The notes beneath the pieces were generated by a model, which was not told where the DNA came from, ran no database searches, and saw nothing but the letters and a program-made list of their open reading frames with translations. Source: Botryllus schlosseri (taxonomy: Eukaryota). Taken from it: 64,000 nucleotides of DNA. Below are positions 37,001 through 56,210 of the stretch, piece after piece. The DNA lies in the NCBI GenBank assembly GCA_051294905.1, contig CM119384.1, positions 15,748,001 through 15,812,000 on the forward strand, written 5' to 3'. Each line of letters opens with the position of its first letter. The stretch's first letter is position 1. Made by a program: the position numbers and the translations under genes.

Positions 37001-37823
37001 TGATCTCCAACGATTTGAACAGATGTGCGATTTGCAGTATTGTAGAATAGTTTTTGAGGTTTTCCTTTTTGGGCTTGTGGCCTGCATTTTATCGATGTCG
37101 GCAGACCAGGCCTATAGTGCGTTCTATTGAAAACTGCTTGCTTATTCAGATTAAGTGGGCTTGAGTTGAAGCAAACTGCATCCAAGTGTGTTACTATGTT
37201 GGGATCATATCGTAATGGTAATGCTACTGTTGTTCTGTCGATATCACTATATTTGTCGCTAGTTACCGCTCGGTGAAAACCGTTTATGCAAAATTTAATG
37301 AACACTGCACACTCCACTCCACACAACTGAAGTATGATCAATTAGTCAGCGCAGAGCTTACTCAACTGACTAATACGAAAAGCAGCGTAGAGTCGACGTA
37401 GTAAAAACACTGTGACGTAAAGAGAAAATATGACGTCACAGAGCTAAACTAATATTTTGGGAAACAACGTGATACCGCCCTCTCTGATCTCGCCACCGCT
37501 ATAGGTAGAAGTGGTCAGTAACGACGTATTTCTACATTAATACGTAATAGGTTGCCGTATATCACAATTTACGCTCATATTCAGTAAAACATTCATTTTC
37601 CGATGTATTAACATCATATTGATGTATTGCAATATTCCTTGTTATTATAGTGGTAACGTCAAATTCACCACTGATAACAGTTGTTTCGATGCTCTTTTGC
37701 AGGCTGCCGATGGCCCACACTTGCTTCAACCAGCTGCTGTTGCCGCCTTACGGGAGCAGAACGCAGCTAGAGCAAAAACTGATTATAGCCGTCAGCAACG
37801 CAGAAGGCTTCGGCTTGGAGTGA
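919..37823 (+). CDS. HECTD2: HECTD2-like HECT-domain E3 ubiquitin ligase, 5'-partial; join(919-1041,1973-2090,3190-3254,3430-3585,4843-5000,6109-6232,6456-6578,7710-7805,10630-10735,14175-14282,15233-15412,22664-22875,24732-24876,31944-32116,37703-37823)
   Basis: All 14 introns are GT-AG and phases are compatible. Exon lengths sum to 2008 nt (1+669x3), ending at TGA. The peptide follows human HECTD2 as remembered (RAYFILLQ, STYVIYAHLLRQIATL, WWIPSA, FxFCQYP, [31 protein letters not shown], SNxEGFGLE-stop). Confidence 0.95.
1973..2090 (+). CDS. HECTD2: HECTD2 exon (NDGQKSS...VDQKFVGLMYEVLSEL)
   Basis: tttttgtag acceptor, CTG|GTAAGG donor; C-terminal half resembles human INAKFVNAVYDTLL; phases fit both neighbours. 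Confidence 0.8.
3190..3254 (+). CDS. HECTD2: HECTD2 exon (PQETQKIVLKGIINCLLKEWQG)
   Basis: tttttag / GG|GTAGGT; near-identical to human PQDVQKTVLKGIINSLLREWKG. Too short for the ORF track. Confidence 0.92.
3430..3585 (+). CDS. HECTD2: HECTD2 exon (TKSNNEIRAYFILLQ...LLTQWLRR)
   Basis: Inside ORF 3410-3775; tttgtttag / AG|GTATGG. Confidence 0.95.
4843..5000 (+). CDS. HECTD2: HECTD2 exon (LSTPRFRPIVERIHQFITLRLFP...WWIPSAMKVLTLA)
   Basis: Inside ORF 4808-5026; cacgaag / C|GTAAGT. Confidence 0.95.
5266..5629. mobile_element. hAT (Charlie/Buster-like) MITE
   Basis: Ends CAGTGCTTTTCAA / gttgaactg (degenerate); 8-bp flanks atttagag / atatagag (7/8). Confidence 0.6.
6109..6232 (+). CDS. HECTD2: HECTD2 exon (NANNLIKPRLISYREFYNVSLDHIDVMAEFKQWQ)
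   Basis: tccaacag / GG|GTAAGA; resembles human ANNLVHPPLIPYTDFYNSTLDHIDLM. Confidence 0.95.
6456..6578 (+). CDS. HECTD2: HECTD2 exon (FTFCQYPYILSLSAKRHILRRDQERQMIRTAR)
   Basis: attttcag / AG|GTGTTG (weak donor); resembles human FSFCQYPFVISVAAKKIIIQRDSEQQM. Confidence 0.9.
7710..7805 (+). CDS. HECTD2: HECTD2 exon (RPTRPPDVNQLFLNIKVKRQNLLQDSLSQIY)
   Basis: aaattcag / GG|GTAAAT; resembles human RQRPDMNILFLNMKVRRTHLVSDSL. Confidence 0.93.
7999..8471. mobile_element. hAT-like MITE with GAGTC/GACTC subterminal repeats
   Basis: TIR CAGGGTTGT / ACAACCCTG; many GACTCGAGTC and AAGTC motifs; TSD poorly preserved. Confidence 0.6.
8850..9248. mobile_element. hAT MITE with AAAGTTGC repeats
   Basis: TIR TAGGACAAGTTTTTG / CAAAAACTTGCCCTA; flanks gttaagag / gtaatgag (6/8). 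Confidence 0.7.
10630..10735 (+). CDS. HECTD2: HECTD2 exon, start of HECT domain ([31 protein letters not shown])
   Basis: HECT N-lobe signature; atgtttag / CAG|GTGACT. Confidence 0.96.
14175..14282 (+). CDS. HECTD2: HECTD2 exon (VLSPDYGTFVHNEKTRTYWF...DYFLVGV)
   Basis: ctttctctag acceptor; donor GTATCCTTT; 108 nt, phase 0-0. Confidence 0.93.
14283..15232 (+). other. U12-type (minor spliceosome) GT-AG intron
   Basis: The 5' splice site GTATCCTTT matches the U12 consensus. TTCCTCAAC at 15208-15216 is 8/9 to the U12 branch consensus TTCCTTAAC and ends 16 nt before the intron end. There is no polypyrimidine tract before the AG. Confidence 0.85.
15233..15412 (+). CDS. HECTD2: HECTD2 exon (LMGLAVYNCITLDLRFP...DDLKDVDP)
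   Basis: ORF 15236-15439; 180 nt; CCT|GTGAGA donor. Confidence 0.96.
15500..16512. mobile_element. Element of the abundant CAGAGGTG / AGTA-TACT motif family, interrupted by nested DNA
   Basis: Starts CAGAGGTG; degenerate end ctacatcta; flanks tatatatg / tatatagt. Related fragments were seen by eye near 4490-4700, 6780-7013, 16880-17160, 17880-18250, 19340-19500, 20340-20540, 24225-24560, 34920-35020 and 43880-44309. Confidence 0.55.
15592..16136. mobile_element. Palindromic MITE with about 210-bp arms, each carrying a perfect CRE; Kolobok-like end
   Basis: 15592 to about 15800 is a near-perfect reverse complement of about 15911-16115. The right tip is CTGTACCT; the left tip lacks about 20 bp. 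TGACGTCA at 15719 and 15981. Confidence 0.85.
18007..18199. mobile_element. hAT MITE (TIR CAATGTTCCCTCTAA), GCGCA-rich
   Basis: TSD ctcccacc / cttccacc (7/8); second copy at 58911-59093 in the opposite orientation. Confidence 0.85.
18316..19156. mobile_element. hAT non-autonomous element (TIR TAGGGCGATTTTTTT)
   Basis: TSD gtcatggc / gtcatgac (7/8); TTTTGACC subterminal repeats. Confidence 0.85.
22262..22520 (+). mobile_element. tRNA-derived SINE with a Meta-domain-like body
   Basis: A-box-like CAGCGTAATGG at 22273 and B-box-like GGATTCAATCCC at 22316. The body TCAGACCAAAGAC...TGGTATT...CTTC.CCGCT...GCTCAGCATT resembles my recollection of the MetaSINE central domain. Short GTAT-type tail. 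Confidence 0.65.
22664..22875 (+). CDS. HECTD2: HECTD2 exon (DMVHGLEELLSYEGDVE...NKAVYR)
   Basis: ORF 22652-22900; aatttccag / AG|GTGCGA. Confidence 0.96.
23620..24222. mobile_element. Degenerate fold-back element with internally duplicated arms, related to 45209-45363
   Basis: gctcaattccaaccagt(a/g)gaagc occurs twice forward and twice inverted. It shares cactggctac.tgat.aaattgttaggtt with the 155-bp MITE. Confidence 0.6.
24732..24876 (+). CDS. HECTD2: HECTD2 exon (QFSAFSEGFHTVC...KKFTTYE)
   Basis: Inside ORF 24616-24984; ttgttttccag / GAG|GTGAGA. Confidence 0.96.
27080..27300. repeat. Diverged about 113-bp tandem duplication
   Basis: ctgagaaagctc.ccagcgtt.gt...tcggaactt.gtc..att..aaatatttcttt occurs twice. 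Confidence 0.75.
27531..27566. repeat. Perfect 18-bp tandem duplication
   Basis: (tagcctggcataagacct)x2. Confidence 0.9.
30191..30355 (+). mobile_element. Solo left arm of the CRE-bearing palindromic MITE family
   Basis: AGGTACAGAACTTCAATATACAATTG...aaatatgacgtcacc; preceded by TTAG; a more decayed arm lies at about 30079-30140. Confidence 0.75.
31944..32116 (+). CDS. HECTD2: HECTD2 exon, C-lobe (GFSANDPTILHFW...[11 protein letters not shown]...)
   Basis: ORF 31935-32120; ttgttgcag / AT|GTAGGT. Confidence 0.96.
32358..33083. mobile_element. hAT-Charlie/Buster-like MITE
   Basis: TIR CAGGGGTGGCCAACC / GGTTGGCCGGCCCTG; perfect TSD atttaacg; cgcgggccacatgtggcccgcg palindrome near the right end. 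Confidence 0.9.
33195..33280 (+). mobile_element. Right-end fragment of the Kolobok-like family of 1-468
   Basis: gaaaacggctgccgcc.aaa...tttgagacca.at.at.tttagag..cagtacccct followed by ATAA. Confidence 0.65.
34145..34733. mobile_element. Degenerate fold-back element of the 23620/45209 family
   Basis: Arms about 34160-34270 and 34600-34710 are reverse complements; right tip tttttggacaacccta. Confidence 0.6.
37703..37823 (+). CDS. HECTD2: HECTD2 last coding exon with catalytic Cys (LPMAHTCFNQLLLPPY...SNAEGFGLE*)
   Basis: ctcttttgcag acceptor; catalytic TGC at 37722-37724; TGA at 37821-37823. Missed by the ORF track. Confidence 0.96.
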
Positions 37824-48300: not shown

Positions 48301-50902
48301 GACATATTACGTAGATGTTGGCATTGATCGGGATTGCGATTTGTCTCATTGCAGTGCTGAAGTGATGTTGTCTGTGTAATTGGCGCTTTCGACAGCAAAT
48401 TCAGAGTGCATTTAACGGTAGAGATGTGTGTGAGCGGAAGTAAGTCACGTAACAAAAGCCACCATTGCTTGTTATCGGGTCATCTTATTTCTTATTGTTG
48501 CGTCACTTTCGTTTGTCACGACGTAGTGACGTCACTTCATTGCGGAAAGCCGTTTATGGCCGTTTTGAATCGTGGCGCGAGGCATGGTTCTTCCTACTAA
48601 ACCTTTATTTTATCTAGTTTCGCACCCGAAATTAATACCATCACTTCTGCGAAAAATAGATTACATAACAATGAATTGGATCACAAAATGCCTCGGGCAT
48701 TACTGAATATCTTTGACATGTTTTCCCGTATTGCAATTACGATACGAAAATATAGAACTAATTTCTCCTCGAACAGCACACCCTAATGTTGATTGATCAT
48801 TGAATCATAAATCCTGTCACGACAATCGTAATTGCTTTCCTGCTATTTCCTATCGCTGTCATTTCGTCACGCCCGCCACTCGATCGTGCGCAAACTCGTT
48901 TGGGTTCATGGGAATAAATAGCTCGTTAATGGGAGTTCACAGCGAATGGCCCATTTCTAACAGGTTAATTTCTCCTGGGTATCTAACGTGTGCTTTTTGT
49001 TCGGTATTCATGTTAATGTTACGTGCCACTATTTATTCCCATTCACGATGTACATTGGGGTAGTATGCTTATTGATTTTGTTACATCCGGCCTCTCTAAT
49101 CGTGATTTGTGTCTTGACTTCTGTAGGACGGCTGATATCTCCCAGCACAAAAATTTATGCTGTGCGTCTCAGTGATTCTGTTGCATTACAAAAAGTTGCG
49201 ATTCCTCGCAAACAGTACAGAAGCTACGTAAGTTTTGTCGTCGACTGTTAGTGTTTACCTGACGTAAGATATGCACGATTTCGAGGTCACTGGCCCCGAG
49301 GCAAGGCTGCGGCACAATCAAGTCGAGGCTTGATCCTGAGCAATCGCAATCACTTCACGTTGAAATGTTTCTTTGTCCGATTCGGACAAATTGTGAACAG
49401 TTCATTACGCAGTGCAACTTCGTGCCTGTTTTATATCGCAGATTATCCCATAAATTCCCTAATACGTATACAGCATAGCGGATGGCTATTACACTCCAGC
49501 CAACATATATGTATCTATCGCCTAAATTACTTCATTTGAAAGTAAGCCCGTTGATCTAACACTGTGGCCTCTCAGTTTTCCCTCAGTCGCGCTGGGAGTA
49601 TTATTTATTAGCCTCTGTCGCTTAATAACTTACAATGTATTAATTTCCCGACATTTTATCACTCTGTAGCAGAGTGGGTTAACGTTCAGACCGTTCAACT
49701 CGATTATTTGCAGTGCCGTTGGCAAAACATATTTGTATTTTGTTGTGATGGCCCCGGGGTATGGTCGGAAACTGAGAAATTCAGCTCGGAAGCGATGTCG
49801 AGATTTTTATGTACACAACTTCGAGCAATTAGTACAGTGGGAGTTCGAGGAAGGGCTACTAACTAGTAACGAGACGCGTTCACTTTGTCGGTAATTTGTG
49901 ATTCGCGTATTTCGCTGAAACAACTTTTTGTAACGCGAAACATATGCACTGCACTGCGAAAATGTGTCAGAAAGGTCTTGTAAGTCTTAAAGCGTAAATA
50001 TGGCCGTAAATATTCAAGTGCTTTTCACTGCATACGTTACTTATACACATTGTAGTCTACTTCCGCTTTGACTGTCGAAGTCAGATCAGTTGTTTCTCTC
50101 GAAATTCCGTCCAGTGAAAAGGGGATTGTGGATAGGTTTGCAGAATTTGCGAAATCTTCCTTCCCTATACCACTACCGATACGGTATTCTTCTCAAAATC
50201 CCAGCCCATTCTGGCAAACGTCCATCCGATGTAATCCGTCTTGTAATTTTGGATAGGGTTCTGGTACCTGCAGATTCACGAATAACAACAAATGACTCAT
50301 CGCCACATATATATTCCAAAAGATAGTAACGTCTAACTAAGTTGTGACTATTGTGCAACTACTTTTGGAAAGTCACTCTTTGCACTTGACAACCGTCAAA
50401 GGTATTACTTCGGTTATCTCAATGGACTTATCGAGGAGGGAATAAAAGGCGTCTTCGCCCCCCTCCCCCAAAAAAAAATGCAATTCGTTTTCACTGCGTC
50501 CCCGCAGAATTTCTCCACCGTCAAATCTTGTATTTCCCATCCCAAATTTCATCCCTGATAACAATGTGTCCTCTCCCATTCACCGGGGAATATGATATGC
50601 AGTGCTGCTAATTTTCGTACGATTACATTGCATATGCGTACTATCTGCACTGCATAGGTGTAATGTAATTTTGACGAAATGCGAGCGTGTCGAATTCCTA
50701 GGTAAGAAGCACTTATCATTGCCGAGATTTTGGTATGATATCGCCTCGCCGTCGAGCTTGTTTATGTTGGAGAATGATTGCCGATACGTCACACGAGGCT
50801 CACTTATGTATTTTGCCGGTACACAAAAGCAGGCAAATCCCACTCGAAAATTTCGCTGCTCCAAAACAACTCATTGCTATTGAACAGGGAAGGATACTCG
50901 CC

Positions 50903-50925
50903 GGGCATGTGCGCCGGGCATGCTC
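50903..50925. promoter_or_regulatory. Candidate p53-family response element
   Basis: GGGCATGTGC (9/10) + 3-bp spacer + GGGCATGCTC (10/10) versus RRRCWWGYYY; 1.66 kb upstream of the Sestrin ATG. Confidence 0.4.
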
Positions 50926-52085
50926 TCACCAATGCTATTGCACGGCTTGCCATCGTGATCGCAGCGGCAGTACGTCACGCTCTGTACAGTGGCAGTGCCG
51001 ATAAATAACAACTCTCCGAGAATTGGTTTCCAGTTTTCCCGTAATTTCTGTGAGCGTGGCGTCGCATTTGATTCTCTAGAAACAAAAAAAAGTGAATCGT
51101 AAGGAAAGTATTACGCCACAGGGCTACAACAGCCACAATTTTTGTTTCCAAAATACCTTCTCACGTGTTTCAACGTGCCTCGACACGCCTGGATAGGCCG
51201 GACTATTACTCAACTAACTCTGTTCGATCGCTACCGGCCATCTCGAGATGTCGCAATGGTATCGGTACGATTGCGAAATAACACAGTGTCTGATATGTCT
51301 GGACCTGGAGCCCGTTCAATACCCATCAGTCTGAGTCAACATTTTGTTCTTTATATTTCAACGCCGGCTCGCCGCCGGCTTATTCGCGATCTTCAAAGCA
51401 CTTGAATGACCTTTGGAGTGCGTTTACGCTGCGTCGTTAGGGGAAATAGCTCTTCTAAATGTTCCAAAAATCGATCAGCTGTTGCTAACTGGAGAGGGGT
51501 TTCAAGATTTTCGAGCACGGTGAACCTCACACTTGTAACTGTCTCCTCTCAGTTTGTGAGCTACCACAGAGGATTACGGGGCATTGCCGACGCAATTGTA
51601 AAATACAGCCCATTGGTTATTTCGCAATGCGGTTTTGATCTCAGATTTTGAAGTCTTCGGCTCACAACTCGATGTGTAATTACTGGGTCAAGCAGTCGTT
51701 GCATTATTCATCTCGGCGGGGAGTGAAAAGTGCGTTTTTTTGCGGGTCAGCATTTTTTTAATCTCCCGCGATTGCACGACCGCGATGCCTATAGTATGAC
51801 CGAAGGGCATGTACTATTGTACTTAGACAGCATTCGGCTAACGTTGCTTTCCGCTATACTGATTCGAAAATACCTCTGAGGATTTTAGTTAAATCTCTCC
51901 GCGGTTAACAGTGACGAATCGATGTTATCGGGAATAGCCGAATAATGTAAAATGTAAATACGTAGATAGTCAATTCTGAGATTTTATCACATAGCGAATG
52001 GGAACTATCAACTTTAGAACATAACTCAAGTAGGTTTTGGAAAATTACCTCTCTGCCGCATACTGACTACATTTTTGTGGTGCTG

Positions 52086-52131
52086 TGACGTCTTGATATT
52101 GCATCACACGGATTGCTGCGGATGATGCAAT
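52086..52131. promoter_or_regulatory. Two perfect C/EBP-ATF response elements (CARE/AARE) plus a near-CRE upstream of Sestrin
   Basis: ATTGCATCA at 52098-52106, TGATGCAAT at 52123-52131, TGACGTCT at 52086-52093; about 450-490 bp upstream of the ATG. Confidence 0.6.
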
Positions 52132-52304
52132 TCTGTATAATGTATCGGCGCGCGGCTATGCGCTTTTTTCGATGAAACGTCACATCGAAAGTTCTGAATG
52201 AGCGGTCAATATGACTAACGCTCCTACGTAAATTTGTTAGAAGCATATTCTGATTTTGGAGTCTTACTGCAAAATCCCAACAGCTGATCAGAAGCCAAGC
52301 GGGG

Positions 52305-52325
52305 TTGTTTCTTTCTCATTTTAAG
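52305..52325 (+). other. Candidate 3' splice (or trans-splice) acceptor in the Sestrin leader
   Basis: ttgtttctttctcattttaAG, with a ctgat branch-like motif near 52284. Possible donor C|GTAAAT near 52228. Confidence 0.35.
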
Positions 52326-52583
52326 CACTGAAACCAGCGGCGCGTGGCAGGAAAAGTACAGCTGGGCTTCCGCTCGTTTGCCTTCCTCTCTTCTTTTCTC
52401 TTCCAGTGTTACTGTCGGTCAACAAATTCGCTGGCTCTGCCTGCAAACATGTTATTCGACAAAGGAAATGGCGGCGTGCGGCCGACAGCGGGCATGCAGC
52501 GTACTTGTAATATAACATATACTCTTTATTGATTGCCAGATATTGCTAGCCGGGTGTACTTCAATAATAGAACTACTGTATAA

Positions 52584-54422
52584 ATGTCGTGTGTCACGTT
52601 CTGCAATACGGTCGGGAGTGACATATCACGTACCGTCATGATGCCTGCCGGCGTAGCGGAAGATGATGAAATATCTGACGTCGGCGCGTCATCTTTTCTA
52701 CCGACGTACGAAGACACCCAAAGACAATTCATTCTGCTAACCAGCACCGATCGAGCGACACGAGAAACCGCTTTGGATACTCTACGAGAGGATATTTGGA
52801 GTTTGGTCGAGTTTTTGAAACAAAAGAATGGAATAAGCCTTGAAAACGCCAACGCTTCAAACGGCCAACAAAAATCATGTGTCTTAACGGCAAGCAACTC
52901 GCGAAACCCAAGCGGCGACCTCGGTACATTCGGGACTCCGAAGCAAGTATTGAATCATCTATTAGGATCATTTTTGAGACTCAGCATGTGGTGTCCATAC
53001 GAGGACGTGCGGTTGGGGTGTAAAGAAACTCTGATGTATTTGAAACAGAGCGGTATTAACGTGCCAAAAGCTTTGGTGAAAGAGCCAAGCTCTTTTATTC
53101 CGCATAGCCATATTCCACCTGTCGATACGGATGACGAAGAAATATCCTCCTTATATGTCGAGAGTTACGCACAGACTTGCAGACTTGAACATATGGTTTT
53201 AGTAATGGGCATGCATCCTCAGTATTTGAAGGAATTTCTTGCCGTGAACATGCATCTTCTCAAAAGCGACGGTGCCTTGCCTTACTGCTACAGAAGCTAC
53301 ATTGGTATTCTTGCCGCCGCCCGGCATAAATGCAAATATTTAGTGCGCTTGATGGAAACGGACTTTGTGGTAGCTGGAGGCGACCCGCAATGGCTGTGTG
53401 GTATCAAACATGCCTGTCCCAAATTAAGAGCGCTGTCGGACTTGAATAAGTTACTTGCCCATCGACCGTGGCTTGTCAACGAAACACATATCGAAAGACT
53501 CTGCAAAGGAGGGAATGGCTGGCAATGGTCTCAATCCGAACTTGTGCAAGCCATTATTCTGCTCTGTCATTTTCATAGTTTGTCCATATTTTGCCACGGC
53601 ACAGGCGTCAACCTTGAATTGGACCATGTGAAGTCCAATTTCTACGATTGTGCAATAAGCCCAAATGGCAACCGATCGCCTCCGAGTTTCGATTTCGACG
53701 GTGATAATTCTTCAAACGATGGTAATGAACAAGGAAACGACAACGATATTGAGGCCTTGATGCAAAAGATGCGACAAATCGATGAGAACGACTCTGAAAT
53801 CATGACCAAAGAAGAATTATCCCGACTGTTTGAGTCACAGAAACTAGAAGCATACAGCCACAATCTTGGCGAAAATATGTATGACAACAACAAAACTGAT
53901 AAGTCATACTGTCTAAAATACATTGACGATGCCGAGTTTAGTTACGAAGAGTTTGCAAAACGCAGTGACAGTAACGAAATCCCCACATTCAAAGCAATGG
54001 ACTTCAACTGGCAGGATCATGCGTATTCATTGGTGAATACGTATTACCATCCTGTCGGTGACATGCTCGACTCGAAATTCCATACCGCTTACAATATGAC
54101 TTATAATACTCTTGCCACCAAGGAGCACGTTGACACCTCCAAACTGCGCCGCGCCATCTGGATGTACATACATTGCACTTGCGGAATCATGTTTGACGAT
54201 TACAATTATGGTGAAGTTAACGAGCTATTAGAAAGATCATTGAAAAATTTTATTAAAACCGCATCATGTTACCCAGAATGTACAACTAAGCAAATCTATG
54301 ATGAATTTTGGAGGCACTTTCGCCATTCCGAGAAAGTACACGTGAATATCGTTTTGTTAGAGGGACGGTTTCAGGTTGAGTTATTATATGCCCTGCGTGC
54401 GGTAACTGAATATATAAAATGA
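52584..54422 (+). CDS. SESN: Sestrin (PA26 family), 612 aa, single uninterrupted ORF with SESN1-long-isoform-like N-terminus
   Basis: Motifs TRETAL, LRLSxxCPYEDVR, PSSFIP, YIGILAAARHKCKYL, LAHRPWL, WSQSEL, YNTL, DTSKLRRAIW, FDDYNYGEVN, FWRHFRHSEKVHVN, LLYALRAV. An in-frame TAA lies immediately before the ATG. An alternative start is possible at ATGATG near 52638. Confidence 0.97.
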   Translation: MSCVTFCNTVGSDISRTVMMPAGVAEDDEISDVGASSFLPTYEDTQRQFILLTSTDRATRETALDTLREDIWSLVEFLKQKNGISLENANASNGQQKSCVLTASNSRNPSGDLGTFGTPKQVLNHLLGSFLRLSMWCPYEDVRLGCKETLMYLKQSGINVPKALVKEPSSFIPHSHIPPVDTDDEEISSLYVESYAQTCRLEHMVLVMGMHPQYLKEFLAVNMHLLKSDGALPYCYRSYIGILAAARHKCKYLVRLMETDFVVAGGDPQWLCGIKHACPKLRALSDLNKLLAHRPWLVNETHIERLCKGGNGWQWSQSELVQAIILLCHFHSLSIFCHGTGVNLELDHVKSNFYDCAISPNGNRSPPSFDFDGDNSSNDGNEQGNDNDIEALMQKMRQIDENDSEIMTKEELSRLFESQKLEAYSHNLGENMYDNNKTDKSYCLKYIDDAEFSYEEFAKRSDSNEIPTFKAMDFNWQDHAYSLVNTYYHPVGDMLDSKFHTAYNMTYNTLATKEHVDTSKLRRAIWMYIHCTCGIMFDDYNYGEVNELLERSLKNFIKTASCYPECTTKQIYDEFWRHFRHSEKVHVNIVLLEGRFQVELLYALRAVTEYIK

Positions 54423-54779
54423 ATTGTTTTACTATGTTTAGCGAATACCCTATTTATCGGCATCAAAATGCTAAATTCTTGACATTTTAACACTGTTCTC
54501 GTTTATCTTTGGTATACCTGTCTAGGAAATGTCAGCCCAAAGAGCTGCTGATACCTGTTGTTTTCCGAAATATTATTGAGGTTTCCAGTGCTGAGTGTTT
54601 TAGGCAAGATTTTGTCATGAATCCAGGAGTCGGGCAGTGTCTAGTTTTTCTACTGCTGTTACTCATCGTTTGCTTGGCGAAACCACTTTGTAATACTTGT
54701 ATACTTAATTGTACTGTGATTTGTGTACTCTGGCATTGCCTTTCAAGCAATGAAACTCTCTAGTTTTCTTATTCTCGAT

Positions 54780-54785
54780 AATAAA
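54780..54785 (+). terminator. Putative Sestrin polyadenylation signal AATAAA
   Basis: Canonical hexamer about 360 nt after the stop, followed by GT/T-rich sequence. Confidence 0.45.
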
Positions 54786-54913
54786 CCTGCTACAAAACCG
54801 AACACCTTTTGTAAAGTACGTGTTGTTTATATCCCAGGAATCGATTTAGTTGGCTGGCAAATCCGCGCAAAACGCTCGTAATTAGACAATGAATTATGCA
54901 GCTCCGTTGTAGG

Positions 54914-55317
54914 CAGTGGTGGCTTTTGTGGTGGGCGGTCGAAGGGGGCCCCCCCTATTCGGGTTATGCGCTTTTTTTAAGGATAATAACGAATAAACAT
55001 GGAAATCCGTGTACCAAGCAAGAATATGATTTCGTTGGGATGTGTCCATCATCATCAAATCTCTGCATTAGTTAAAAAAGTCCCGTATCCCGATGATCAT
55101 CACGTCTCTGCATGCGGTAGAATTACTTAGTCTTGATGCAATCTATCCTTGGACACATACAATAATAGACATAGCCGAATCCAGCAGCTAAACCTTACCG
55201 CGGGAAAAGGGGGGTCTGGGGGGCGGAAGTTACGGTTAGATACTTATAGGGCCCCCCCCCGGTAAGTCTCGCCCAGCCCCCCCCCCCCCCCCCCCCCCGT
55301 TCGTAAGGCCACCACTG
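54914..55317. mobile_element. hAT (Tip100-like) MITE with a 22-nt poly-C tract
   Basis: TIR CAGTGGTGGC / GCCACCACTG; perfect TSD gttgtagg. Confidence 0.9.
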
Positions 55318-56210
55318 GTTGTAGGTCAGTCTTAACTAGAACGAATGGCGATAGAGTTCACGTGGCTTGACAAAGAACTAGCCATTTCTGAAGGTGTGGT
55401 ATCAAAACAGCCATTGGAGTTCGGAGGACATACGCTATCATCCTTGTGATTTTACTGTCACTGTAAAGTTGGATTGGCATTGTATATAACACGCAAGTGC
55501 GTTCGCCGTGACGCCAGATTGCACTACTGTTTAACTGAAATTGAGTCGTTTTGTTGTCGCAATGCGAAACAATGTCAACGAACCGCGCATTTCTAGAAGG
55601 TACATATTGATAAATGCGAACAGCGTTATCCGGCGCCTATAAGTCTCGGGGATCGAAGAATTCAATTTTATTGCGACTGCAGTTACGCCAGTCGGCCGGC
55701 TGCCGGAAGCTTTGCGAGCAGCCGTACAAGCAGACACTTGTCAGGGATTGCCGCACAGCAAAGCATAGAAAGTGCGGAGCGCTCAAATTACTTCACGCTT
55801 CCTTTCTCTCGATAGCTGTCGCAAAATTCGCTCTTGTTGGTAGTTCCATGGCTTTTGCCACGTCTTTGTGGAGTTATACGCACAGTACAAGCTCAATTGA
55901 GCAACGAATAGGGGAGAAACTTGCACCGTGACTCACCTCCGATGAGAATCATGATGACAATGTCGACATCACACAGGTAGCAAAGGTACCACGGGTGCGT
56001 GGTACATTCGACAGTATTTGATGTCAACAATCAAACCTTACTCGAAACCGCATTTCATGTTGACGAAATCTCTCCGGACTCCGGAGTGGATACATGTTTG
56101 CTGCATATCTTTTGAACTTCGACGAATGCGTTACTTTTCAATTCATGGTATGTATGATGAAACAGAACATAGGATGATTACGATGCGTTCTCAAGAAGGG
56201 ATATGGGCAT

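What the first reader, a model, noticed from the sequence alone, without database searches (positions are those of the whole stretch)
52086..52140. Paired perfect ATF4 CARE sites at the Sestrin promoter: a compact amino-acid-stress module
Seen: ATTGCATCA and TGATGCAAT lie 16 bp apart in opposite orientation, next to TGACGTCT and followed by tgtataat. The only other copies of this 9-mer I noticed are at 2494 and 55134. Known: TGATGCAAT is the ATF4-C/EBP element of CHOP-type promoters, and mammalian SESN2 is ATF4-induced and inhibits mTORC1 via GATOR2. Inferred: a GCN2-ATF4-Sestrin-mTORC1 loop in an invertebrate, driving a single gene that combines SESN1-like structure with SESN2-like regulation.
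Basis: partly seen in the sequence, partly recalled or inferred. Interest (0 to 1): 0.72.

Follow-up and report, generated by a model that had tools for sequence, protein, structure and literature searches.

The report
Paired stress-response sites upstream of Sestrin
Two perfect copies of the DNA motif that the stress factor ATF4 uses in mammals sit head-to-head about 430 bases upstream of a sea-squirt Sestrin gene, unlikely by chance, so ATF4 probably switches this growth-brake gene on under stress, but that is a prediction because the true transcription start is hidden by trans-splicing and close-relative genomes could not be compared.

Summary
ATTGCATCA (52098-52106) and TGATGCAAT (52123-52131) lie 16 bp apart. 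TGACGTCT precedes them, tgtataat follows, and the only other window copies are at 2494 and 55134.

The gene downstream is a real Sestrin: one 612-aa ORF at 52584-54422 in a stolidobranch ascidian. Two perfect 9-mers within 600-1000 bp have P of about 7e-5 to 2e-4 at the genome-wide rate. The DNA is single copy, and identity stops at the motif edges.

New here: the mRNA is spliced-leader trans-spliced at 52539|52540, so the mature 5' end does not show the TSS. The pair sits 409-442 bp upstream of that acceptor. A Ciona outron of 459 nt makes a TSS just after the TATA-like box plausible, but it is unmapped.

The genome encodes ATF4, C/EBP, GCN2-type and Mios-type proteins. Perfect CAREs also lie upstream of ATF4 itself and of one ChaC gene.

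Conservation is weak: a near-CARE cluster in one distant orthologue and none in another. Stress induction is untested.

Verdict: a credible predicted CARE-type promoter module, a new member of a known kind, of modest interest.

The parts
52087..52094 (.). CRE-like site TGACGTCT (7 of 8 positions of the palindrome TGACGTCA), 3 bp before the first CARE
   Evidence: Sequence. A CRE plus CARE pairing is the functional ATF4-responsive grammar of the mammalian ATF3 promoter (PMC10448979).
52098..52106 (-). CARE 1: TGATGCAAT on the minus strand. The C/EBP half (ATTGC) is on the outside and the ATF half faces inward.
52123..52131 (+). CARE 2: TGATGCAAT with the extended flank GGATGATGCAATT. The ATF half faces inward and the C/EBP half outward.
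52134..52141 (+). TATA-like tgtataat, 2 bp after CARE 2. This is the candidate core promoter and is inferred only.
   Evidence: Sequence. The TATA-driven, trans-spliced Ciona TnI promoter is a precedent (PMC3074122).
52178..52183 (-). A further CRE half-site (ACGTCA on the plus strand)
52165..52539 (+). Putative outron of about 375 nt if the TSS follows the TATA-like box. It is 54% A+T, contains 6 ATGs, and ends in the acceptor ttattgattgccAG.
   Evidence: Inferred. There is no RNA depth over 51964-52357 and only 0.22 over 52358-52554. The Ciona TnI outron is 459 nt.
52540..52583 (+). 44-nt 5'UTR that follows the spliced leader in mature mRNA
   Evidence: Contigs from two studies (X1, X4) both begin at 52538. 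X4 carries GTTGTATTA in front of it, which is the 3' end of the SL ATTGGAGTATTTGGTTGTATTAAG.
52584..54422 (+). Sestrin coding sequence: a single ORF of 612 aa with no coding introns
   Evidence: The start MSCVT is shared with the 70%-identical orthologue L007.
54423..55008 (+). 3'UTR. Transcript contigs end at 54800/54801 or at 55008.
   Evidence: table 8.
55134..55142 (+). Third perfect TGATGCAAT, 130-330 bp beyond the mRNA 3' end. Whether it belongs to Sestrin or to the next transcription unit is unresolved.
   Evidence: Three perfect sites in 3.2 kb has P = 3.7e-5.

Best explanation
The two 9-mers are functional C/EBP-ATF composite sites (CAREs). Together with the adjacent CRE-like TGACGTCT and the TATA-like tgtataat, they form the proximal stress-responsive promoter of the single Sestrin gene of this ascidian.

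Proposed mechanism:
1. Stress kinases such as GCN2 or PERK phosphorylate eIF2-alpha, and ATF4 protein rises.
2. ATF4, as a heterodimer with C/EBP, occupies the two inward-facing CAREs and perhaps the CRE.
3. Transcription starts a few tens of bp downstream of 52141.
4. The outron of about 375 nt, which contains 6 ATGs, is discarded by spliced-leader trans-splicing at 52539|52540.
5. The resulting mRNA (SL + 44-nt UTR + 612-aa ORF) yields a Sestrin that keeps the leucine-pocket and GATOR2-contact residues and can therefore restrain TORC1.

Shown: the sites, their improbability, single-copy context, trans-splicing, and the presence of ATF4, C/EBP, GCN2-type and Mios-type genes.

Inferred: the TSS position, ATF4 occupancy, stress induction and the TORC1 effect.
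For: - The sites are exact.
- P(2 or more perfect sites in 600-1000 bp) is 6.6e-5 to 1.8e-4 at the genome-wide rate. That rate is inflated by repeat-borne copies, so the estimate is conservative.
- Arm identity ends at the motif edges, and the DNA is single copy.
[quoted passage not shown] That is the same scale as the mapped Ciona TnI outron: acceptor at -64, TSS at -523, with a TATA element (PMC3074122).
- The nearest upstream coding gene (HECT, + strand) ends about 14 kb away, and ORFs in between have no Pfam match, so an operon or a shared promoter is unlikely.
- An ATF4 orthologue exists: basic region NKSAATRYREKKR, best PDB hit the ATF-4 chain of 1CI6, E 2e-12. C/EBP orthologues exist too.
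- Perfect 9-mers also lie within 2 kb upstream of the ATF4 gene (flanked by TGACGTAG and GACGTCA, with three more relaxed CAREs) and of one ChaC gene. That is 2 of 4 other ISR-type genes, P = 0.011, against 0 sites in 74 kb of unrelated loci.
- Direct pairs of the perfect CARE are over-represented genome-wide: 17 places against 3.3 expected.
- Mammalian SESN2 is ATF4-dependent, and ATF3 uses a proximal CRE + CARE pair (PMC10448979; PMC6904332).
- The Sestrin protein keeps the SESN2 key residues.
Against: - The TSS is not mapped, and no outron reads were seen in about 6% of one RNA run.
- CpG observed/expected gives no promoter signature; the whole window is about 1.1.
- The TATA-like box is a weak match, and the nearest CATC motif is 48 bp away.
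- No orthologous promoter retains a perfect CARE. L006 (61% identity) has only TGATGCAAG at -1.1 kb, and Clavelina has none in 5 kb.
- 4E-BP and the second ChaC gene have no CARE within 2 kb.
- Inward pairs and CRE + CARE combinations are not enriched genome-wide once repeats and base rates are considered.
- Another inward pair sits beside a Med15-like gene, which is not a classical ATF4 target.
- There are no expression data under stress.
Confidence: 0.5

Rival explanations
1. The sites are functional bZIP sites but are used mainly by C/EBP homo- or heterodimers, or by other ATF/CREB-family dimers. Such regulation could be tissue-specific, metabolic or immune, or general ER-stress control through C/EBP, and would not form a GCN2-ATF4 amino-acid-stress loop.
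For: - Each 9-mer contains a C/EBP half-site (GCAAT).
- At least two C/EBP-type genes are encoded.
- The orthologous upstream region in L006 is richer in C/EBP-type sites (TTGCACAAT, GTTGCGCAAT) than in CAREs.
- The region also carries CRE-type sites.
- From my own knowledge, C/EBP-beta drives mammalian SESN2 under ER stress.
Against: The exact 9-mer is the composite site rather than the C/EBP palindrome. The right-hand copy has the extended GGATGATGCAAT flank that I recall, from memory and unchecked, as the SELEX-derived ATF4 motif. The same 9-mer marks the ATF4 and ChaC upstream regions.
Confidence: 0.2
2. The pair is a chance co-occurrence with no regulatory function. The first reader found it because it looked for motifs of known Sestrin regulators.
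For: - About 1.6 such inward pairs are expected genome-wide and 3 are seen.
- With relaxed motifs the cluster is not exceptional in the window.
- No perfect site is conserved in L006 or Clavelina.
- No functional data exist.
Against: The probability that a chance pair falls in the 600-1000 bp upstream of this particular gene is about 1e-4. Even allowing for half a dozen candidate regulators it stays under 1e-3. A third perfect copy lies just 3' of the gene.
Confidence: 0.15
3. The element is a real regulatory module, but it belongs to another transcription unit, or it acts as a distal enhancer. The other unit could be an unannotated upstream or antisense RNA around 49.7-51.4 kb.
For: Low-depth contigs of run X2 cover 49764-51347, and a few X23 reads lie at 49994-50584. 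The Sestrin TSS is unmapped.
Against: - X2 also shows low-depth contigs downstream of the gene, so this may be background DNA or nascent RNA.
- No ORF in 38-52 kb has a Pfam match.
- The pair is much closer to the Sestrin acceptor (about 0.4 kb) than to those contigs (about 0.75 kb), and it is followed by a TATA-like box oriented toward Sestrin.
Confidence: 0.1
4. The inverted repeat acts as an RNA or DNA hairpin, for example within a longer outron, rather than as protein-binding sites.
For: A 9-bp stem with a 16-nt loop folds at -16.6 kcal/mol in a 61-nt context.
Against: The z-score is only -1.56, and 16 of 200 shuffles fold as well. The arms coincide exactly with a known protein-binding 9-mer. 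No RNA coverage is seen there.
Confidence: 0.02

Closest known systems
Mammalian C/EBP-ATF response elements (CAREs/AAREs) of ATF4 target promoters, e.g. the ATF3 promoter with CRE at -90/-82 and CARE at -21/-13 (PMC10448979)
   Same: It has the same core consensus TGATGXAAX. A CRE-type site sits next to the CARE, and the position is promoter-proximal just upstream of a TATA-like box. The cognate factors ATF4 and C/EBP are encoded.
   Different: Here there are two perfect copies in inverted orientation 16 bp apart. The gene is SL trans-spliced, so the element lies about 0.4 kb from the mature mRNA 5' end. Binding and inducibility are untested.
ATF4-dependent induction of mammalian SESN2 (PMC10448979, PMC6904332, PMC12339033)
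   Same: The target gene family is the same (Sestrin/PA26). The protein retains all residues aligned to the SESN2 leucine-pocket and GATOR2-contact positions.
   Different: This is the single pre-duplication-type Sestrin of a tunicate. It has no coding introns and carries an N-terminal extension of about 165 aa. No expression evidence exists. In the library searched I found no paper showing ATF4 control of Sestrin in an ascidian.
Ciona intestinalis troponin I promoter/outron (PMC3074122)
   Same: It is a TATA-type promoter of an SL trans-spliced ascidian gene. The acceptor lies a few tens of nt before the ATG (-64 there, -45 here), and the outron is of several hundred nt (459 nt mapped there, about 375 nt predicted here).
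   Different: The TnI TSS was mapped experimentally; here it is only predicted. The putative outron here is less A+T-rich (54% against 68%).

Membership tests
CARE (C/EBP-ATF composite response element) | Sequence matches TGATGXAAX | tested here: met
   Both copies are TGATGCAAT. The consensus is as quoted in PMC10448979.
CARE (C/EBP-ATF composite response element) | Occurrence beyond chance at the locus | tested here: met
   P = 6.6e-5 to 1.8e-4 for two or more sites in 600-1000 bp. The DNA is single copy.
CARE (C/EBP-ATF composite response element) | Lies in the promoter or other regulatory DNA of the responding gene | tested here: inconclusive
   [quoted passage not shown] The TSS is hidden by SL trans-splicing, and there are no outron reads.
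CARE (C/EBP-ATF composite response element) | Cognate factors ATF4 and C/EBP encoded by the organism | tested here: met
   ATF4: L033:1444-2250:-, matching the ATF-4 chain of 1CI6 at E 2e-12. C/EBP: L024 and L028.
CARE (C/EBP-ATF composite response element) | Bound by ATF4-containing dimers and needed for induction by amino-acid or ER stress | not testable with these tools
   Needs ChIP or EMSA and reporter mutagenesis.
CARE (C/EBP-ATF composite response element) | Conserved in orthologous promoters | tested here: inconclusive
   L006 (61% identity) has TGATGCAAG plus TTGCACAAT at -1.1 kb, within the densest bZIP-site cluster of that 16-kb contig. Clavelina L044 has none in 5 kb. Closer relatives could not be fetched.
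ATF4-inducible Sestrin (SESN2-type regulation) | The gene is a Sestrin with intact leucine-pocket and GATOR2-contact residues | tested here: met
   PA26 E 4e-162. The alignment to 5DJ4 keeps T374, T377, T386, R390, DD406-407, W444 and E451. The roles of these residues are from my own knowledge.
ATF4-inducible Sestrin (SESN2-type regulation) | mRNA rises under ISR-activating stress in an ATF4-dependent way | not tested
SL trans-spliced ascidian gene | Non-genomic leader at the mRNA 5' end joined at an AG acceptor, with matching SL copies (SL exon followed by a GT donor) in the genome | tested here: met
   X1 and X4 contigs start at 52538 after ...ccAG, and X4 carries GTTGTATTA. GTTGTATTAAG|GT occurs 255 times against 32 for the control, and 9 of 12 sampled copies share ATTGGAGTATTTGGTTGTATTAAG|GT.

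The most novel reading that the evidence does not exclude
Sestrin lost all its coding introns in stolidobranch ascidians: it is intronless here and in L006, but intron-containing in Clavelina. On this reading the gene is a retrocopy-derived locus whose new promoter acquired a CARE-pair/CRE/TATA stress module afresh. ATF4 control of Sestrin would then be old enough or valuable enough to be re-created after gene relocation. The module would be one of a small set of homotypic perfect-CARE clusters, including one at the ATF4 gene itself, that mark the integrated-stress-response regulon of this tunicate.
Probability: 0.2. Interest if true: 0.5.

Novelty: new member of a known kind. Interest (0 to 1): 0.33.

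Why it matters
If it is confirmed, the ATF4-to-Sestrin link between the integrated stress response and TORC1 would not be a SESN2-specific vertebrate feature. It would already operate on the single Sestrin of the closest invertebrate relatives of vertebrates. That would give a compact promoter of about 60 bp that can be tested by electroporation for ISR studies in ascidians.

It also has a practical consequence for annotation. Because this gene is SL trans-spliced, the mRNA 5' end must not be read as the TSS in this genome.

Tried and rejected
- Transposon or duplication origin: rejected. The 300-bp, 1.18-kb and 1.7-kb upstream stretches are single copy, and arm identity stops at the motif edges.
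- Hairpin: z = -1.56, unremarkable.
- CpG observed/expected as a promoter mark: uninformative, about 1.1 across the whole window.
- Genome-wide enrichment of the inward pair: none (3 against 1.64 expected). Outward pairs: 2 against 1.64.
- CRE-half + CARE within 40 bp: 143 against a control of 30. After scaling for the 3.3-fold commoner 9-mer, about 90-100 are expected, and many hits are repeat families, so there is no clear enrichment.
- Canonical targets: 4E-BP and ChaC-a have no CARE within 2 kb. ASNS gave only one weak exon hit. DDIT4 and PPP1R15 were not detected by Pfam.
- Target gene of the L021 three-CARE cluster: unresolved, lying between an Aa_trans gene and a Med15-like gene. No gene was recognised beside the L020 pair or the C8 cluster.
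- Orthologue promoters: contigs for P0001 and P0002 (96% and 75% identity) gave no DNA. Styela clava and Ciona proteins are not on record. L007, L045, L046, L047 and L048 have 240 bp or less upstream.
- Literature: I could not open Gu et al. 2022. I found no paper in the library showing ATF4 control of Sestrin in flies, worms or ascidians.
- uORF check of the ATF4 leader: inconclusive, because its 5' exon structure is unknown.

Full report
**Observation.**
- TGACGTCT lies at 52087-52094.
- ATTGCATCA lies at 52098-52106, and TGATGCAAT at 52123-52131, with 16 bp between them.
- tgtataat lies at 52134-52141.
- The 9-mer has four copies in the window (2494, 52098 on the minus strand, 52123, 55134) against 1.22 expected.
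- In the pair, the ATF-type halves (TGAT) face inward and the C/EBP-type halves (GCAAT) face outward.
- Identity between the arms ends exactly at the 9-mer.

**What lies around it.**
- A single uninterrupted ORF at 52584-54422 (+) encodes a 612-aa Sestrin (PA26, E 4e-162). It is the only PA26 match in the 495.5-Mb genome.
- Its relatives place the organism among stolidobranch ascidians: Styela clava 70%, Ciona 48-54%, vertebrate sestrin-1 42-46%.
- The start MSCVT is shared with a 70%-identical orthologue.
- The protein aligns with human SESN2 (5DJ4, E 3e-124) and keeps the residues aligned to T374, T377, T386, R390, D406-D407, W444 and E451. That these form the leucine pocket and the GATOR2 contact is from my own knowledge.
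- The nearest upstream coding gene is a HECT ligase on the + strand whose last HECT exon is at 37701-37817. ORFs between 38 and 52 kb have no Pfam match.
- The 2.9 kb upstream of the gene is single-copy DNA.

**The 5' end: trans-splicing.** I laid one raw RNA-seq run and transcript contigs from three other studies on 49600-55500.
- Contigs from two studies begin at exactly 52538, directly at the acceptor ...ttgattgccAG|atattg. One carries nine non-genomic letters, GTTGTATTA, in front.
- GTTGTATTAAG followed by GT occurs 255 times in the genome against 32 for the reversed control.
- Nine of twelve sampled copies share ATTGGAGTATTTGGTTGTATTAAG|GT.
- The Sestrin mRNA is therefore SL trans-spliced at 52539|52540, 44 nt before the ATG, and the mature 5' end says nothing about the TSS.
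- No reads cover 51964-52357, as expected for a discarded outron at this sampling depth (about 6% of the run).
- The pair lies 409-442 bp upstream of the acceptor.
- In the one ascidian gene where this was mapped experimentally (Ciona troponin I), the acceptor is at -64, the TSS at -523 and the outron is 459 nt, behind a TATA element (PMC3074122).
- A TSS shortly after the TATA-like box at 52134-52141 would give an outron of about 375 nt with six ATGs. This is plausible but inferred. CpG content does not help.

**More than chance?**
- Genome-wide the 9-mer occurs 9504 times on both strands, or 1.92e-5 per bp.
- Two or more copies in a pre-defined 600-1000 bp upstream interval has P = 6.6e-5 to 1.8e-4. 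Three copies in the 3.2-kb locus has P = 3.7e-5.
- The background includes repeat-borne copies, so these figures are conservative.
- The inverted geometry itself is not special: 3 inward and 2 outward pairs at 5-40 bp, against 1.64 expected each.
- Direct pairs are over-represented, 17 against 3.3 expected, so homotypic clusters of the perfect CARE do exist in this genome.
- A hairpin reading is not supported (z = -1.56).

**Is the machinery there, and is the motif used elsewhere?**
- The genome encodes an ATF4-type bZIP (NKSAATRYREKKR). Its best solved relative is the ATF-4 chain of the ATF4-C/EBP-beta heterodimer 1CI6, E 2e-12.
- It also encodes C/EBP-type bZIPs, a GCN2-type HGTP_anticodon2 domain and a Mios-type zinc ribbon.
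- Among four other ISR-type genes, two carry a perfect 9-mer within 2 kb upstream.
  - One is the ATF4 gene itself. Its site is flanked by TGACGTAG and GACGTCA, with three more relaxed CAREs nearby.
  - The other is one of the two ChaC genes.
  - 4E-BP and the other ChaC gene have none.
  - The expected number is 0.15, giving P = 0.011. Unrelated loci totalling 74 kb contain no perfect site.
- A second inward pair (C14:648592) has very similar flanks and a third perfect copy 330 bp away. It lies between an amino-acid transporter gene and a Med15-like gene, and its target is unresolved.
- The CRE + CARE grammar matches the mammalian ATF3 promoter, where both sites support ATF4-dependent induction (PMC10448979).

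**Conservation.** Only two orthologous genomic loci could be read.
- In L006 (61% identity, also intronless) the only TGATGCAA in 16 kb is TGATGCAAG, 1.1 kb upstream of the gene. A C/EBP-like TTGCACAAT lies 21 bp before it, within the densest bZIP-motif cluster of the contig. The second densest cluster is also upstream. This is suggestive, but it has a chance probability of roughly 0.04-0.2.
- Clavelina (intron-containing gene) has no CARE in 5 kb upstream.
- Closer relatives could not be fetched.

**Literature.**
- ATF4-dependent induction of SESN2 is established in mammals (PMC10448979, PMC6904332, PMC12339033).
- I found no paper in the searchable library showing ATF4 control of Sestrin in an ascidian, and none that documents it in flies or worms. 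One key fly paper could not be opened.

**Verdict.**
This is a statistically credible, well-placed CARE-type module next to a Sestrin gene, in an organism that has all the parts of the proposed loop. Promoter status, ATF4 binding, stress induction and conservation remain untested or weak.
- It is a new member of a known kind of element and link.
- The most useful new fact is that the gene is SL trans-spliced. This changes how the 'map the TSS' test must be done.

Noticed in passing
window 52526-52583: The Sestrin mRNA is spliced-leader trans-spliced at 52539|52540. The SL of this species reads ATTGGAGTATTTGGTTGTATTAAG, and GTTGTATTAAG|GT occurs about 255 times in dispersed copies across the genome.
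   Followed up: yes
window 55134-55142: A third perfect TGATGCAAT lies 130-330 bp beyond the Sestrin mRNA 3' end, and about 180 bp before an X2 contig that begins at 55318. It may be a downstream element of Sestrin or the promoter of the next transcription unit.
   Followed up: partly
L021 8281-8640 (G000:C14:648281-648640): Three perfect CARE 9-mers plus TGACGTTA lie within 360 bp. Their flanks resemble the Sestrin pair (gaTGATGCAATTgtat..ggcgc). The cluster sits between an intronless Aa_trans transporter ORF (L021 2714-4171) and a Med15-like gene (L023).
   Followed up: partly
L049 1490-1690 (G000:C8:8140462-8140662): A dense bZIP-site array: TAACGTAATGACGTAGGT-TGATGCAAT-gcgaa-TGATGCAAT, followed by three more TGACGT/ACGTCA halves. 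No gene was recognised within 1.5 kb on either side.
   Followed up: partly
L043 (G000:C7:13314200-13321700), upstream of the ATF4 ORF: The ATF4 gene's own upstream region carries TGACGTAG..TGATGCAAT..GACGTCA, plus TGATGCAAC and two relaxed CAREs within about 700 bp, which may indicate autoregulation. A likely first coding exon (MDLSFGDYD...) lies 223 bp before the ORF used here, and several short uORFs lie further upstream.
   Followed up: partly
genome-wide: Repeat families carry CRE + C/EBP + CARE combinations. TGACGTATTGCGCACAGTGATGCAAT has at least 25 copies, and TGACGTCATATTT[GT]GTGATGCAAT is another. These are mobile or repeated DNA bearing bZIP sites.
   Followed up: no
window 52584-54422; L006 4443-6293; L044 10001-14662: The Sestrin CDS is intronless here and in a 61%-identical relative's genomic contig. 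It is split over 4.6 kb in Clavelina. This is consistent with intron loss or retroposition within stolidobranchs.
   Followed up: partly
G000:C11:26080390-26080725 and L021 2714-4171: Other nutrient-sensing or transport genes appear as long open frames without introns: a Mios-type hit inside a 900-aa open frame, and a 485-aa Aa_trans ORF.
   Followed up: no
window 49764-51347: Low-depth contigs of one run (X2) and a few raw reads cover unique, ORF-poor DNA 0.75-2.3 kb upstream of the pair. This could be an unannotated RNA, nascent transcription or DNA carry-over.
   Followed up: partly
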